Shown piece after piece: positions 13,451 through 18,224 of a DNA stretch of 64,000 nt (position 1 is its first letter; every line of letters begins with the position of its first letter). Where the stretch lies: the sequence record MK250021.1. One strand, 5' to 3'. Position numbers and translations under genes: made by a program. The notes under the pieces are model-generated. The model saw only the letters and a program-made list of their open reading frames with translations, had not been told where the DNA came from and did no database searches.

Positions 13451-14464
13451 TTACATAATATATTGTAAAAGCATCTATGTTTCCTCATCAGCTTTTAATT
13501 TTGGATATGCAGCTCTAAGTATCTGTAATACACGTGTTTCTGTCATTCCATGTTCTTCTGCAACTTGCCATGTATTCTTTTCACCACGTCCATTAATACC
13601 ATAGCAATCACATACAATTTCACCATCTCTTTCACCAAGAACTCTCTTTACATTATCTTCAAGTTCTCTTTCAAGATCAGCGTTATTAAGATTACTATCA
13701 GGGTCTTTAAATGTCCTATTAGCTGTTACATCACCTAATGTTGTTTTAGAATCATCATCATCCCCGTATGATTTATCCAAACTATTTGCACGTGTATTTG
13801 CTTCCATTGTTTGTGCAAATGTTTCATATTTCAAATCTGGATGTTTCTTTACGAGAACATTATAAATATCATCAATATCAGGTTCATAACCATTCTTATT
13901 ATATAATTGATCCTTGATACGAGCGGCTTCACGAGCAATACTACCCATATTACGGGGAACTGCCATATGTCCACCTACCTCATCAACAGCAGTCATAATT
14001 TCTCTACGAATATACCAAATAGCATAAGAAACAAAACGTACATCTTTACCTGGCAAACTTGGATCATATGTATCTGCTGCTTGCATAAGTCCTATATTTC
14101 CATATTGAATCATATCTTCCTTTGGTATATTAATATTTTTATACTTATTGACAACAGAAATAACAAATGGAAGATTTGCGGACACCAACTTATTCTTTGC
14201 CTTTTCAATTTCTCTCTTATTATCAGAATGTTGAATAATATCAGCAAGTTTCACTTCATCTGCATGTGATAATTGTTTTTTCTTATTAATAGCATGTAAA
14301 TATGCAATAGTAGACTTTGCTGTATTTTCATCCTGTGTAATAGCAAAATCATCATGCAAATCCATATGCATTCCATTATTAGCTTCATTGAGTTTCTTTC
14401 TAATAGTCTTAGAAACATTTCTCATGATACTTTCATACAATGTCTTCTTTTCATTTAACTTCAT
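13451..14464 (-). CDS. Sigma-70 family RNA polymerase sigma factor, 337 aa in code 15
   Basis: Region 2 LVSANLPFVISVVNKY...DMIQYGNIGLMQAADTYDP...FVSYAIWYIRREI; region 4 HTH; track stop at 13475 is TAG, next TAA at 13451. Confidence 0.9.
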
Positions 14465-14558: not shown

Positions 14559-15116
14559 TTATTCTATATTTAATATTTGTTTAATCTTTACTATGTCATC
14601 CTGTGTTATACCTGAATAACTATCTATTTTTATAAAGTTATCCTGTTGATATGTCATCATATCATCATCGTCATCTACTATACAATAATCTATTCTTAAT
14701 TCATCATCTTTAAATTTAAAATAATCTTCATCATAAAATTGTTTATAGTTTCGCACATTTGTATTTCCGCTATACATAAGGAAATAATGAATTTCATTTC
14801 CTCTTATTGAGTGTTCATCATGATATTTTGGTGTTATACCTACTATATATTTAATTAAACATTTCAAATCTTTATACTTATCAAACGCATATTTTGTTGC
14901 TTCTAATGAAATCTCTCTCCATGACGATGATATAACTAATCTTACATTATAATTCTCACATAATTGTTCTATAAGTTTTACTGCATTTTTGTCTACAAAA
15001 TGATCACCATTTTCTTCATTTATATATTTCTTTCCTTCCTTTGTAAAACACCAATTCGCATATTGTTCAGAATTCAAAACACCGTCTATGTCTAAAAATA
15101 ATATTTTTATATTCAT
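14559..15116 (-). CDS. HAD-family phosphatase (HAD_SAK_2-like, RNA-repair associated)
   Basis: ILFLDIDGVLNS, RLVISSSWR, CIVDDDDDM, FIKIDSYSGIT. Confidence 0.75.
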   Translation of the reverse strand: MNIKILFLDIDGVLNSEQYANWCFTKEGKKYINEENGDHFVDKNAVKLIEQLCENYNVRLVISSSWREISLEATKYAFDKYKDLKCLIKYIVGITPKYHDEHSIRGNEIHYFLMYSGNTNVRNYKQFYDEDYFKFKDDELRIDYCIVDDDDDMMTYQQDNFIKIDSYSGITQDDIVKIKQILNIE

Positions 15117-16418: not shown

Positions 16419-16514
16419 TGGATATAGATGGACTCGAACCACCATGTATCTGCCCTAGAATTATGATACAAACTAACATCATATTAGTCGCGTTTACCAT
16501 TTCGCCATATATCC
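16419..16514 (-). tRNA. Atypical class II tRNA-like gene (Leu-type body, apparent anticodon UGA)
   Basis: GGATATA/TATATCC acceptor, GCG/CGC D-stem with GG, ACTAA/TTAGT stem, loop TATGATG, long variable arm TGTATC/GATACA, T-loop TTCGAGT. Confidence 0.65.
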
Positions 16515-16520
16515 ATATAG

Positions 16521-16593
16521 CAGGCCTGATGAGATTCGAACTCACAACAACATGATTAAAATTCGTGTGCTCTACCAATTGAGCTACAGGCCC
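16521..16593 (-). tRNA. tRNA-Lys(UUU)
   Basis: GGGCCTG/CAGGCCT acceptor, GCTC/GAGC D-stem, loop ATTTTAA, T-loop TTCGAAT; one C-A mismatch in the anticodon stem. Confidence 0.9.
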
Positions 16594-16599
16594 AAAGTT

Positions 16600-16915
16600 C
16601 TATTTTAAATTTCCACGCAATAGAACTCCGAAGATTTGTAGATCTGTGTTCATGGTACTTAATCTAATGCTTGTTTTTAATACTGACGTGTTAACCTCTT
16701 CACCAAATCCCCGATTAAATAATATGTAATAGAGGGGATTCATGGGTTCGAACCATGGATAATCAGTAAAATCATGATATATCACGAATGACACCATGAC
16801 AATCTACGTTAACTGTAATACTAAAGCTCTTGACTCAATGCTAACGCTAAAATCTAGGATTCTGTTTATGCTAAATGTAATCAAGCTAATGCTTTAGTCA
16901 ATTTACATATGTTAT
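16600..16915 (-). ncRNA. Circularly permuted tRNA-like RNA (3' half 16767-16733 precedes 5' half 16712-16682) with extended flanking helices
   Basis: 3' half ACTGA-TTATC-CATGG-TTCGAAC-CCATG-AATCCCC-T; 20-nt spacer; 5' half GGGGATT-TG-GTGAAGAGGTTAACAC-G-TCAGT; all four stems pair with canonical lengths. Confidence 0.75.
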
Positions 16916-17009: not shown

Positions 17010-18224
17010 ATGAATAAGAATTATAACAAACTATATGAAGAAATGATGTCAGATATTTCAGTTATCGTTAAAAAGAAAATAAATGAAGCATATGACAATC
17101 AGCTTCTCGAAGAATATGGTGCAAAGGATATGTTTAATGATATTATGAAAGAAGCATCAAAAGAAGGTAAAATCTTTTATAAGCATCTTAAATAGTTTAT
17201 AATTTATATCATCAAAAAATTACAAGAGACAGATCAATATAAGAAAGCTGAAAAACTTATGAATGCGTATGTTCAGAAAGTACAGAAATATATTGATGAA
17301 CATAAGAAGATTACTCCGAGACGTATGTTGAAAATTACTGTTGCTGTATTGACAATGTATGGTGGCGTTTCAATGATACAAGATTGTAAATAGATGATTA
17401 AATCTTTATAGGGTAATGTTGAAACTTATGAATAGAAAGTAGAAAATGTACCGGATGAAAAGCAACAAGAAGTAATAGTAGAAGAACCTGAAGATTTTGT
17501 TGTTGAAGTTAAAGATGAAGCAAAAGAAGAATTAAGTGTCAAGAAAGTATCTACTGAAGATATTAATAATACACCTGAAAAGAAATTTAAAGAAGACAAA
17601 AATTTCAATTTTAAGTCAAGTAATGAGGCTCGCGAATTTATTAAACATCATGAGTTATGTTTACTTTACCCTTATTACGCAAAACCCGAAGAGGAAGCAA
17701 AAGGAATGGTAACTATTGGTTATGGTCATGTTGTATTGGAATCAGATGGTGAATTATACAAGAAAGTATAGCAATTAAAAAAGAAAGGCTTAATTAAACA
17801 ATCATTTGTTACAAAAAATGGTAAAACTATTTTAAACCCTAATCATTGTAAAACCATTATAACAAAGACTGACGCAGATAAATTATTTTAGAAAGATATT
17901 AAGATTGCTGAATAGCGTGCATATAGAACTATACAAAATATGCCTACTGATGATGATAATGTTAAATATTATATGTTATATAATCAAAAAATAAGAGATG
18001 GTTTAACATCATTATGTTATAATGCTGGATAGCTTAAACATGAAAAATATACATTCATAACAAAAGGTCTTGCAAAATCTAGATATGATTATCAAGCATA
18101 GAAAATAAATGCAGGTGATTATAATGTATCCTTTAAATATTTCAAGAATATTAAAGATAATCCTAACAGAAGAAATGAGGAATATAAGTTATTCTTTATG
18201 AACGCAAATAAGTCTATGTCATAA
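17010..18224 (+). CDS. GH24 phage lysozyme with N-terminal extension, 404 aa in code 15
   Basis: Nine in-frame TAG; FIKHHELCLLYPY...GMVTIGYGH...GLTSLCYNAG...RRNEEYKLF. Confidence 0.8.

What the first reader, a model, noticed from the sequence alone, without database searches (positions are those of the whole stretch)
16600..16915. Circularly permuted tRNA-like gene in a phage
Seen: positions 39-73 (16767-16733) lie upstream of positions 1-31 (16712-16682), separated by a 20-nt spacer. The halves give a perfect 7-bp acceptor GGGGATT/AATCCCC, D-stem GTG/CAC with GG, G15:C48, anticodon stem TCAGT/ACTGA and T-arm CATGG-TTCGAAC-CCATG. Instead of a closed anticodon loop, leader and trailer pair further (TCATGGTG 16792-16799 with TACCATGA 16650-16657; GTAGAT 16802-16807 with ATCTAC 16638-16643). 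Established: permuted tRNAs are known from some algae and archaea, two-piece tmRNAs from some bacteria; I know of none like this in phages but cannot search. Standard scanners would probably miss it. Inference: RNase P and 3' trimming give a two-piece RNA; it may be spliced to a tRNA (5'-side loop would read UAA) or stay two-piece as a decoy or tmRNA-like RNA.
Basis: partly seen in the sequence, partly recalled or inferred. Interest (0 to 1): 0.9.

Follow-up and report, generated by a model that had tools for sequence, protein, structure and literature searches.

The report
Permuted tRNA-mimic RNA in Lak megaphage
A giant gut phage carries a conserved small-RNA gene whose tRNA-shaped fold is encoded back to front; it resembles bacterial Y RNAs more than a working tRNA, and it belongs to a previously undescribed family shared with other phages.

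Summary
A complete tRNA body is encoded as 3' half, 20-nt spacer, 5' half. The anticodon stem runs into a leader/trailer helix instead of a loop. ARAGORN and Rfam miss it. Re-joined in tRNA order, all 18 family members are called tRNAs.

The structure is under selection. Across 18 sequences from several clades, 97% of pair cells are paired, against 70% in shuffles. 24 of 33 pairs change on both sides.

It is probably not a decoding tRNA, because the anticodon-position triplet differs between clades. It is not the phage's tmRNA. It has no G3:U70, tmRNA models do not match, and Lak has a canonical tmRNA plus SmpB elsewhere.

The closest precedent is the YrlA class of Y RNAs. M. smegmatis YrlA has the same permuted tRNA module, is cut by RNase P and receives CCA.

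In every non-Lak relative examined, the element lies directly downstream of a Ro60-like RNA-binding gene and a DUF7873 gene. Lak lacks the Ro60-like gene.

Best reading: a new Y-RNA-like, probably two-piece, tRNA mimic. Its function is inferred, not shown.

The parts
16830..16901 (-). Upstream block. It is closed by TTGACT (16901-16896) pairing with AGTCAA (16835-16830) and is rich in TTAGC/NAGCNT hexamer repeats. It is nearly invariant among Lak clades.
   Evidence: Only 2-3 substitutions in about 105 nt between Lak clades, although the tRNA stems are completely changed. Shared with non-Lak phages. One compensatory change, CTGACT/AGTCAG, in L154. Covered at 100% identity by a contig from an RNA library.
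16802..16807 (-). Helix H1, 5' strand (GTAGAT).
   Evidence: All 6 pairs change on both sides across clades (helix 1).
16792..16799 (-). Helix H2, 5' strand (TCATGGTG).
   Evidence: 4 of 7 modelled pairs change on both sides. Two more compensatory pairs in relatives from runs X8 and X12.
16772..16787 (-). Small hairpin in the 5' side of the internal loop (TCGTGA-TATA-TCATGA).
   Evidence: Minimum-free-energy fold. A hairpin of different sequence sits at the same place in L063, L163 and group 2.
16733..16767 (-). tRNA positions 39-73: 3' strand of the anticodon-stem equivalent, variable loop with C48, T arm, acceptor 3' strand, discriminator T. No CCA is encoded.
   Evidence: helices 3, 4 and 5 covary.
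16713..16732 (-). Spacer closing the acceptor stem. It is probably excised: an RNase P site lies 5' of G16712 and 3' trimming would follow T16733.
   Evidence: Length and sequence are hypervariable: 17-27 nt in short forms and 67-130 nt in others. The base before G1 is T in 8 of 9 clade types (C in Lak-B) and the base after the discriminator is always C. Cleavage itself is inferred, not shown.
16682..16712 (-). tRNA positions 1-31: acceptor 5' strand GGGGATT, U8, D arm (A14, G15, G18G19, A21), 5' strand of the anticodon-stem equivalent TCAGT.
   Evidence: The D arm is invariant in 18 sequences but is replaced by an ordinary 4-bp D arm in L241.
16658..16681 (-). Single-stranded 3' side of the internal loop. 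It holds the conserved motif GCATTAGATTAA (16670-16659), which is GCNTTAGCNTRA in other clades.
   Evidence: The motif is present in every clade. It reads Ala-Leu-X-stop, and it also matches the hexamer repeats of the upstream block.
16638..16657 (-). H2 3' strand (TACCATGA), asymmetric internal loop ACACAG with conserved (T)GAAC, and H1 3' strand (ATCTAC).
   Evidence: The TGAAC(G) bases are conserved in all clades.
16596..16627 (-). Downstream hairpin (AGTTCTATT / AATAGAACT) whose 14-nt loop is invariant in Lak.
   Evidence: Compensatory changes between Lak-B and Lak-A/C with the loop unchanged. An analogous hairpin occurs in other clades.
16521..16593 (-). tRNA-Lys(UUU), starting 2 nt after the hairpin and probably co-transcribed.
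   Evidence: ARAGORN and Rfam, 63 bits.
16419..16514 (-). A 96-nt tRNA-like gene with a long extra arm containing an invariant TTCTAGG. It recurs after the element in all clades.
   Evidence: Rfam tRNA at 45 bits, missed by ARAGORN. Alignment A9.

Best explanation
The element is a phage non-coding RNA of the Y-RNA type, and it is not a decoding tRNA. Its core is a circularly permuted tRNA mimic. It is transcribed on the minus strand together with the tRNAs that follow it. It folds into a cloverleaf-like four-way junction in which the acceptor stem is closed by a dispensable spacer. The anticodon stem continues into a stem / internal loop / stem module (H2, loop with GAAC, H1) formed by leader and trailer. 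RNase P most likely cuts 5' of G16712. The 3' end after T16733 is most likely trimmed and given CCA. That would leave two pieces held together by about 26 base pairs and the D/T-loop contacts, as shown experimentally for M. smegmatis YrlA. The resulting L-shaped RNA has no anticodon. It would act as a scaffold or decoy. The leader/trailer helix and conserved single-stranded motifs would bind a Ro60-type RNA-binding protein. That protein is phage-encoded in the non-Lak relatives. In Lak it may be the host's Rsr, or no such protein at all. The tRNA-like domain would engage proteins that recognise tRNAs, such as processing or modification enzymes, PNPase or anticodon nucleases. Shown here: the structure, its conservation, and the synteny with Ro60-like and DUF7873 genes outside Lak. 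Inferred: transcription, cleavage, CCA addition, protein binding and biological role.
For: The structure is proven by covariation. The tRNA body is canonical. The spacer is hypervariable in length and sequence, while the RNase P and 3'-end contexts are kept: T before G1 in 8 of 9 clade types, and C after the discriminator as in the neighbouring tRNA-Lys. Precedent: YrlA Y RNAs have the same permuted tRNA module, and M. smegmatis YrlA, with a 7-bp acceptor, is cut by RNase P in vitro and in vivo and receives CCA (PMC4201824). In all 27 non-Lak loci with the element, a DUF7873 gene ends 14-54 nt upstream on the same strand. A 600-aa protein lies directly before it wherever the locus extends that far, which is all but three short loci. 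That protein's AlphaFold model (pLDDT 74) has Ro60/Rsr/TROVE structures as its top 13 full-length Foldseek matches, at E 5e-7 to 4e-4, including D. radiodurans Rsr and a phage Ro60. It also matches PHROG 850 'RNA-binding protein' at 1e-29. This meets the genomic criterion used for YrlA: same strand, within 4 kb of Ro60. Phage Ro60 with adjacent Y-like RNAs that co-opt host PNPase is documented (PMC12135203). In a cultured cyanophage, the homologous Ro60-like gene is followed by five stem-bounded small modules, one of which contains a T arm.
Against: Lak itself has no TROVE or Ro60-like gene. Pfam TROVE, single-protein and 41-sequence profile searches of whole Lak genomes were all negative. The Rfam YrlA model does not hit the element. 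The Ro60-contact motif GNCGAAN0-1G is absent; the conserved bases are different (TGAAC on the 3' strand) and lie on the other side of the helix. Foldseek TM-scores for the Ro60-like protein are low, 0.3-0.4. No read-level evidence of transcription, ends or CCA was obtained. The only RNA-library signal is one low-depth contig over the upstream block. The large, nearly invariant upstream block and the conserved GCNTTAGCNTRA motif are not explained by the Y-RNA model.
Confidence: 0.5

Rival explanations
1. A free-standing tRNA decoy. The anticodon-less, L-shaped, CCA-tailed RNA would competitively bind host anti-phage nucleases or other factors that target tRNAs (anticodon nucleases of the PrrC/RloC/PARIS kind), independently of any Ro60-type protein.
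For: The tRNA body is canonical and has nothing to cleave at the anticodon. In Lak it sits directly beside tRNA-Lys(UUU), which from my own knowledge is the classic anticodon-nuclease target. It persists in Lak without a Ro60-like gene. A gene with an RNA-repair-type HAD domain (HAD_SAK_2) lies 1.3 kb downstream. Hughes et al. proposed such a competitive-inhibitor role for YrlA (PMC7790460).
Against: It does not explain the strict synteny with Ro60-like and DUF7873 genes outside Lak, the conserved leader/trailer loop bases, or the upstream block. No anticodon nuclease of the host is known here.
Confidence: 0.2
2. A cis-acting leader of the tRNA operon. The tRNA-like fold and flanking helices would only serve processing or stability of the polycistronic tRNA precursor, for example as an RNase P entry site or a 5' protection element, with no function in trans.
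For: It always sits at the head of a tRNA array or pair, 2 nt to a few tens of nt from the next tRNA. An RNA-library contig joins a tRNA 3' end directly to the block in a relative.
Against: The sequence invariance of the upstream block, the D arm, the hairpin loop and the single-stranded motif across clades, while all stems drift, points to specific trans contacts. The synteny with an RNA-binding protein points the same way.
Confidence: 0.15
3. A minimal two-piece tmRNA-like rescue RNA. After processing and charging it would enter stalled ribosomes, and the conserved GCN-TTA-NNN-TAA in the 3' loop would serve as a 3-codon tag frame.
For: The permuted tRNA-like domain with a long helix matches two-piece tmRNA topology. 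The A-rich stretch followed by GCA TTA GAT TAA resembles a resume codon and a tag ending in ...ALA. The frame and stop are kept in all clades, with a second in-frame TGA 6 nt later in most. Lak encodes SmpB.
Against: Position 3:70 is never G:U (G:C or C:G in all clades). The D arm and 5-bp anticodon stem are canonical, where SmpB should sit. tmRNA_permuted, mt-tmRNA and tmRNA models do not match. Lak already has a canonical tmRNA with G3:U70, A73 and a ...MAA tag. Group-2 phages have the element but no SmpB. The same hexamer motif is repeated many times in the upstream block, where a coding reading is inconsistent.
Confidence: 0.08
4. A true permuted tRNA gene. Leader and trailer would be removed and the ends ligated, for example by an RtcB- or Rnl-type ligase, to give a normal decoding tRNA as in Cyanidioschyzon.
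For: It has a perfect tRNA body in permuted order with a leader/trailer helix. Several further permuted tRNA-like units occur in related phages' tRNA arrays, one His-like with G-1/C73 and one with encoded A73-CCA.
Against: There is no conserved anticodon on either side of the junction. The leader/trailer helix is not a bulge-helix-bulge motif. From my own knowledge, bacteria lack the splicing endonuclease. No group I intron signal was found. The conserved loop bases would be discarded in this model.
Confidence: 0.04
5. A non-functional remnant of two tandem copies of one tRNA gene, or an assembly artefact.
For: Tandem identical tRNA genes do give the same 3'-half/5'-half juxtaposition, as in the tRNA-His pairs.
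Against: In those pairs the model matches only positions 45-137 and complete tRNAs flank them. Here there is no D arm upstream and no T arm downstream. All stems co-vary between the halves across many clades. The stretch occurs in many independent assemblies.
Confidence: 0.01

Closest known systems
YrlA-type bacterial and phage Y RNAs, especially Mycobacterium smegmatis YrlA (Chen et al. 2014, PMC4201824; Rfam RF02553)
   Same: A circularly permuted tRNA-like module: T arm, closed 'acceptor' stem, then D arm, with the RNA ends on the anticodon side in a terminal stem. Canonical tertiary-pair nucleotides, including the 15:48 Levitt pair. The M. smegmatis RNA has a 7-bp acceptor, is cut by RNase P and receives CCA, giving two pieces. 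It is encoded next to a Ro60-type gene on the same strand, as here in all non-Lak relatives, and it is found in phages.
   Different: There is no sequence or covariance-model similarity. The GNCGAAN0-1G Ro60 motif is absent. The partner outside Lak is a DUF2828/DUF7788 protein that Pfam TROVE does not recognise, and an extra DUF7873 gene is always interposed. Lak has no such protein. The spacer is much longer (17-130 nt). There are also a large conserved upstream block, a conserved single-stranded GCNTTAGCNTRA motif and a downstream hairpin.
Thermus phage phiLo Ro60 with Yrl1/Yrl2 (PMC12135203)
   Same: A phage-encoded Ro60-fold protein with adjacent small RNAs built as a 5'-3' stem flanking an internal bulge. 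The proposed role is hijacking of host PNPase.
   Different: Those RNAs carry a CGAA motif and are not described as permuted tRNA bodies. The protein is a recognisable TROVE member.
Circularly permuted tRNA genes of Cyanidioschyzon merolae and other algae and archaea (from my own knowledge: Soma et al. 2007)
   Same: The 3' half is encoded upstream of the 5' half, the intervening sequence is removed by RNase P and 3' processing, and leader and trailer pair.
   Different: Those genes mature through a BHB motif, splicing endonuclease and ligation into a circular intermediate, and they yield normal decoding tRNAs with conserved anticodons. None of this is seen here.
Two-piece (permuted) tmRNA of Alphaproteobacteria, some Betaproteobacteria, cyanobacteria and mitochondria (PMC11915505)
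   Same: A permuted gene, a processed two-piece RNA held together by helices, a tRNA-like domain without an anticodon, and a short frame-like motif ending in a stop codon.
   Different: There is no G3:U70/A73 alanine identity. The D arm and anticodon stem are canonical. There are no pseudoknots and no model match. The phage has a separate genuine tmRNA.

Membership tests
YrlA-type Y RNA (RF02553; Chen et al. 2014) | tRNA-like domain in permuted order (T arm, closed acceptor-like stem, D arm) with the RNA ends on the anticodon side | tested here: met
YrlA-type Y RNA (RF02553; Chen et al. 2014) | Ro60-contact motif GNCGAAN0-1G near the 5' end | tested here: not met
   No such motif occurs in any clade. 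The conserved bases are (T)GAAC(G) on the 3' strand and a weak YGAATT near the small hairpin.
YrlA-type Y RNA (RF02553; Chen et al. 2014) | Encoded within about 4 kb of a Ro60 (TROVE) ortholog on the same strand | tested here: inconclusive
   Not met in Lak: no TROVE or Ro60-like gene anywhere in the genome. Met in all non-Lak relatives that reach far enough, for a Ro60-fold DUF2828/DUF7788 protein, though Pfam TROVE does not recognise that protein.
YrlA-type Y RNA (RF02553; Chen et al. 2014) | Scores at or above the Rfam gathering threshold (69 bits) | tested here: not met
   There is no hit on the element. The weak 13-24-bit hits lie on ordinary tRNAs.
YrlA-type Y RNA (RF02553; Chen et al. 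2014) | Bound by Ro60/Rsr in vivo | not testable with these tools
   Needs co-immunoprecipitation or EMSA.
Permuted two-piece tmRNA | Alanine identity (G3:U70, usually A73) | tested here: not met
   Position 3:70 is G:C or C:G in all clades, and the discriminator is T or G.
Permuted two-piece tmRNA | Match to tmRNA_permuted (RF04321), mt-tmRNA (RF02544) or tmRNA (RF00023) | tested here: not met
   No hit on the Lak element. Sub-noise hits of at most 19 bits were seen in two group-2 contigs and may or may not overlap their elements.
Permuted two-piece tmRNA | Tag reading frame with a resume codon and a stop | tested here: inconclusive
   A 3-6-codon frame ending in TAA/TGA is kept in all clades. 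The same hexamer recurs non-codingly in the upstream block.
Permuted two-piece tmRNA | It is the genome's partner RNA for SmpB | tested here: not met
   Lak has SmpB and a canonical one-piece tmRNA elsewhere. Group-2 phages have the element without SmpB.
Circularly permuted tRNA gene (algal/archaeal type) | 3' half upstream of 5' half, with both forming a canonical tRNA body | tested here: met
Circularly permuted tRNA gene (algal/archaeal type) | A conserved anticodon restored at the junction | tested here: not met
   The triplet at position 34-36 differs between clades. The 7 nt upstream of the 3' half are not conserved either.
Circularly permuted tRNA gene (algal/archaeal type) | Bulge-helix-bulge motif formed by leader and trailer | tested here: not met
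   Leader and trailer form 8-bp and 6-bp helices separated by a 2/6-nt asymmetric loop, next to 24/24-nt internal loops. There is no 3-4-3 BHB.
Ordinary tRNA gene | Detected in native order by tRNA scanners | tested here: not met
   ARAGORN finds none. Rfam tRNA gives a 15.3-bit partial hit.

The most novel reading that the evidence does not exclude
The element would define a new class of phage ribonucleoprotein RNAs: two-piece, CCA-tailed tRNA mimics with an extra hexamer-repeat domain. They would work with a divergent Ro60-fold protein (DUF2828/DUF7788) and DUF7873. They would belong to a wider, undescribed set of stem-bounded modules in phage tRNA arrays: stem plus TACAGCAA, several of which enclose other permuted tRNA bodies. 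In Lak the RNA would act without the phage protein, for example by capturing host Rsr or PNPase or by neutralising a tRNA-directed defence.
Probability: 0.3. Interest if true: 0.85.

Novelty: new variant of a known kind. Interest (0 to 1): 0.62.

Why it matters
Y RNAs and Ro60 are conserved from bacteria to humans, yet their functions are poorly understood. Only a handful of bacterial or phage systems have been studied. This family would add an abundant, easily recognised and strongly covarying example from gut phages. One homologue of the protein partner occurs in a cultured cyanophage, and many sequence variants are available. It would link an uncharacterised phage protein family (DUF2828/DUF7788, DUF7873) to a specific RNA. 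It would also show that tRNA arrays of large phages hold several permuted tRNA-like genes that annotation pipelines miss. For Lak megaphages it adds a conserved non-coding gene to genomes that are still deposited without annotation. If the RNA proves to be a decoy or scaffold aimed at host RNA decay or tRNA-directed defence, it would be a new counter-defence principle.

Tried and rejected
(1) Rfam at gathering and permissive thresholds gave no known family on the element: no ribozyme, intron, T-box or tmRNA.

(2) The YrlA, tmRNA_permuted, mt-tmRNA and tmRNA models on whole records gave only noise or other loci.

(3) SmpB in Lak looked like support for a tmRNA role. The canonical Lak tmRNA found afterwards neutralised that clue.

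(4) Pfam TROVE, the group-2 Ro60-like protein and its 41-sequence profile all found nothing in Lak genomes.

(5) DUF7873 exists in Lak but about 166 kb away, with no adjacent RNA or large same-strand partner.

(6) The single-sequence AlphaFold model of the 600-aa protein was unusable, with pLDDT 36. phmmer against the PDB found nothing. The alignment-based model worked.

(7) One IMG/VR scan was wasted on a pattern with one N too many. The 16-mer scans gave mostly chance hits that had to be sorted by script. The metagenome scan returned mainly ordinary tandem tRNA pairs.

(8) Public reads gave only assembled contigs, so ends, strand, CCA addition and cleavage could not be read.

(9) A coding reading of the upstream block, as repeated Ala-Leu-Ala-stop, is not consistent across clades.

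(10) Burroughs & Aravind 2016, which mentions a novel tRNA-like RNA in repair systems, is not held and could not be read.

(11) Single-strand folding energy alone is unremarkable, z = -1.5. The evidence for structure comes from covariation, not from energy.
Full report
**Source.** The window is identical over the tested 801 bases to Prevotella megaphages Lak-B2, B4 and B7. It is 98-99% identical to the other Lak-B genomes and about 79% identical to Lak-A and Lak-C. These records carry no annotation. The feature lies on the minus strand.

**Observation check.**
- Leader: H1 5' strand 16807-16802, H2 5' strand 16799-16792, and a small hairpin at 16787-16772.
- 3' half: tRNA positions 39-73 at 16767-16733.
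- Spacer: 20 nt at 16732-16713.
- 5' half: tRNA positions 1-31 at 16712-16682.
- Trailer: a 24-nt single strand, the H2 3' strand at 16657-16650, a 6-nt loop and the H1 3' strand at 16643-16638.

The body has U8, A14, G15:C48, G18G19, A21, a TTCGAAC T loop, a 7-bp acceptor and a 5-bp T stem. ARAGORN reports only the neighbouring tRNA-Lys in the whole window. Rfam gives nothing above threshold on the element. When the halves are re-joined in tRNA order, ARAGORN calls a 73-76-nt tRNA in all 18 family members tested.

**The structure is real.** Lak-A/C differ from Lak-B by compensatory changes in the acceptor stem, the T stem, H2 and the downstream hairpin. A 553-kb Lak-like contig (L063) has completely different acceptor, anticodon-stem, T-stem, H2 and H1 sequences that all still pair. 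I built a covariance model from three Lak sequences with the full proposed structure, 33 pairs. It recovers 18 distinct sequences full-length at 56-228 bits. Ordinary tandem tRNA pairs match only the tRNA core.

On the resulting alignment:
- 97.0% of cells pair, against 69.6% in column shuffles (0 of 500 reach it) and 31-46% when partners are slid.
- 24 of 33 pairs change on both sides.
- Five of six helices are supported. The D stem is invariant.

That alignment is fitted to the model, which favours the structure. However, the same compensations are visible in plain MAFFT alignments and in two further relatives from public runs. An artefact or a decayed tandem duplication is excluded.

**Extent of the family.** An invariant stretch of the upstream region led to a second, very different group of 95-190-kb viral contigs. 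It also led to single contigs L154, L163 and L241. All share this order:
- an upstream block closed by YTGACT...AGTCAR and full of TTAGC-type hexamers;
- H1, a 2-3-nt bulge and H2;
- a small hairpin;
- the 3' tRNA half, a spacer of 17 to about 130 nt, and the 5' tRNA half;
- a single strand containing GCNTTAGCNTRA;
- the H2 3' strand, a loop beginning (T)GAAC(G), and the H1 3' strand;
- a hairpin, then a normal tRNA, then an odd long-arm tRNA-like gene.

There is one copy per genome. Between Lak clades the upstream block differs by only 2-3 bases, while all tRNA stems have turned over.

**Processing (inferred).** The spacer is the only part free to vary in both length and sequence. The base before G1 is T in 8 of 9 clade types (C in Lak-B, the window's own type). 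The base after the discriminator is always C, exactly as after the adjacent tRNA-Lys, and CCA is not encoded. A 7-bp acceptor stacked on a canonical T arm is the main RNase P determinant. There is also direct experimental precedent. M. smegmatis YrlA has a permuted tRNA-like module with a 7-bp acceptor, is cut by RNase P in vitro and in vivo, and then receives CCA (PMC4201824).

I could not verify cleavage. The public runs that hold the stretch are available only as contigs. The single RNA-library run shows one low-depth contig over the upstream block, joined to the 3' end of a tRNA. That could be a relative with another gene order, a tandem unit or a circular RNA.

**What it is not.**
- *A decoding tRNA.* The triplet at the anticodon position differs between clades (att, taa, cac, tta, ttc, tag, ata). 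The bases on the other side of the junction are not conserved either. There is no BHB motif and no intron signal.
- *The phage's tmRNA.* Position 3:70 is never G:U. The D arm and anticodon stem are canonical. Three tmRNA models fail. Lak encodes SmpB together with a canonical one-piece tmRNA with G3:U70, A73 and a tag ending in MAA. The short Ala-Leu-X-stop frame in the 3' loop is conserved and keeps a small probability for a tmRNA-like role. But the same hexamer recurs many times in the upstream block, where no consistent frame exists.

**Link to Ro60-type proteins.** In all 27 non-Lak loci that hold the element, a DUF7873 gene ends 14-54 nt upstream on the same strand. A 600-aa DUF2828/DUF7788 gene lies directly before it wherever the locus reaches that far. 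This includes relatives whose proteins are only 46-61% identical.

The 600-aa protein has a helical N-terminal part and a vWA domain with a MIDAS motif. Its alignment-based AlphaFold model (pLDDT 74) has Ro60, Rsr and TROVE structures as its 13 best full-length Foldseek matches. Generic vWA domains come only after them. TM-scores are modest, 0.3-0.4. It also matches PHROG 850, 'RNA-binding protein'.

Its closest named homologue is in the cultured Leptolyngbya phage Lbo-JY46. There the gene is followed by five tandem small modules. Each is closed by a short stem, with TACAGCAAA after the 5' strand and (C)TGATAAG after the 3' strand. One module holds a T arm. The same stem-plus-TACAGCAA signature occurs repeatedly in the group-2 tRNA arrays, and the longer units enclose other permuted tRNA-like bodies.

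This is the genomic pattern of Y RNAs: several small stem-closed RNAs next to a Ro60 gene, some with tRNA-like domains. It is documented in bacteria and phages (PMC4201824; PMC12135203; PMC7824862).

**The Lak case.** Lak has the RNA but no Ro60-like gene by any search. Its DUF7873 gene is about 166 kb away. The window shows only chance-level TACAGCAA matches. The Lak copy is thus an orphan of the cassette. The control search shows that Bacteroides thetaiotaomicron encodes a TROVE protein, so a host Rsr partner is conceivable for a Prevotella phage. I could not test Prevotella itself. Nearby Lak genes include a sigma-70-like ORF (by eye, not searched), an RNA-repair-type HAD protein (HAD_SAK_2) and a lysozyme-domain protein.

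**Most likely mechanism.**
1. Shown: a conserved cloverleaf-like junction with a closed acceptor and a leader/trailer stem-loop-stem.
2. Inferred: co-transcription with the tRNAs, then RNase P and 3' processing at the spacer and CCA addition, giving a two-piece L-shaped RNA without an anticodon.
3. Inferred: binding of a Ro60-fold protein, and perhaps DUF7873, to the helix/loop and single-stranded motifs, while the tRNA-like domain recruits or blocks tRNA-recognising proteins. That would make it a Y-RNA-like scaffold or decoy.

I put 0.5 on this reading, 0.2 on a Ro60-independent decoy, 0.15 on a purely cis-acting operon leader, 0.08 on a tmRNA-like RNA, 0.04 on a true permuted tRNA and 0.01 on remnant or artefact.

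**Novelty.** The architecture is known: YrlA, which is also found in phages and is even processed into two pieces in one species. The finding is therefore not categorically new. But the element fails the sequence, motif and model tests for YrlA membership. Its partner proteins are uncharacterised DUF families. It carries extra conserved domains. It also belongs to a wider set of unannotated permuted tRNA-like units in phage tRNA arrays. I found no description of it in the searchable literature. I rate it a new variant of a known kind, with interest 0.62.

Noticed in passing
window 16419-16514 (-): A 96-nt tRNA-like gene with a long extra arm. Rfam tRNA scores 45 bits and ARAGORN misses it. A counterpart follows the element and its tRNA in every clade. 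TTCTAGG in the extra arm is invariant, but the 'anticodon' arm is variable and sometimes non-canonical, so it may be another non-decoding tRNA mimic.
   Followed up: partly
window 16521-16593 (-) and the equivalent tRNA in L045, L021, L154, L163: The tRNA directly after the element appears to be one lineage whose anticodon differs by clade: Lys UUU in Lak, Lys CUU, 'Glu' UUC, Gln UUG, and amber suppressor CUA in L163. In Lak-B1/B3-type genomes its anticodon loop has an extra T, giving an 8-nt loop.
   Followed up: no
L045:6400-6563, L044:5320-5473, L021:202-382(-), L022:11773-11928, L051:5200-5355: A second kind of permuted tRNA-like unit lies between tRNA-Pro and tRNA-Ala in group-2 arrays. 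It has a leader/trailer helix GAATACT/AGTATTC, TTACAGCAA, and T arm GTAGG-TTCGATT-CCTAC. Its acceptor covaries (CCTCCCC/GGGGAGG, CCTTCCC/GGGAAGG, CCCTCCT/AGGAGGG). It encodes A73 plus CCA and has no D stem.
   Followed up: partly
L045:8290-8440, L051:7080-7230: A third kind of permuted tRNA-like unit looks derived from tRNA-His: G-1, C73, acceptor CAACCTC/GAGGTTG and a His-type D arm. It is closed by AGAAGTCT/AGACTTCT with TTACAGCAAC.
   Followed up: partly
L245:4655-5020 (Leptolyngbya phage Lbo-JY46); L044, L045, L021, L051, L242, L243 (many sites): Repeated modules of the form TAAG(A) - 6-8-nt stem strand - TACAGCAA(A) ... complementary strand - CTG, spanning 37-174 nt. Five lie in tandem right after the cyanophage's Ro60-like gene, and many lie between tRNA genes in group-2 arrays. 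They are candidate Y-like RNAs, or processing signals.
   Followed up: partly
window 16814-16906 joined to 16420-16482 (run X18): A 171-nt contig from an RNA-seq library joins the 3' end of the long-arm tRNA-like gene directly to the start of the upstream block ('goes back 487'). It could be a relative with another gene order, a tandem unit or a circular RNA. Contigs cannot decide which.
   Followed up: no
Lak-B2 record MK250021.1: 417475-417884 (+) and 118712-119143 (+), outside the window: Lak encodes a canonical one-piece tmRNA (Rfam 47.3 bits, exactly at threshold; ARAGORN misses it; tag ...FRMAA) and its own SmpB at 186 bits.
   Followed up: yes
window 14559-15116 (-); 13451-14464 (-); 17010-18224 (+): Neighbouring genes. 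A 185-aa protein carries the HAD domain of 'Swiss Army Knife' RNA-repair proteins (HAD_SAK_2, 5e-18). A 337-aa ORF looks like a sigma-70-type factor by eye; it was not searched. A 404-aa protein has a phage-lysozyme domain. Many ORFs need TAG read as a sense codon.
   Followed up: partly
L021:3146-3366(-), L023:2701-2977, L026:4719-5024(-), L027:12701-13003, L241:6261-6458: In many group-2 members the acceptor-closing spacer is 67-130 nt long and contains its own hairpins. This looks like an insertion into the loop that is presumably excised.
   Followed up: no
L243:6330-6699, L244:3477-3846: Another phage group with the Ro60-like gene carries a standard tmRNA (ARAGORN tag GDTEGTPMMRAAA) inside its tRNA array.
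   Followed up: no
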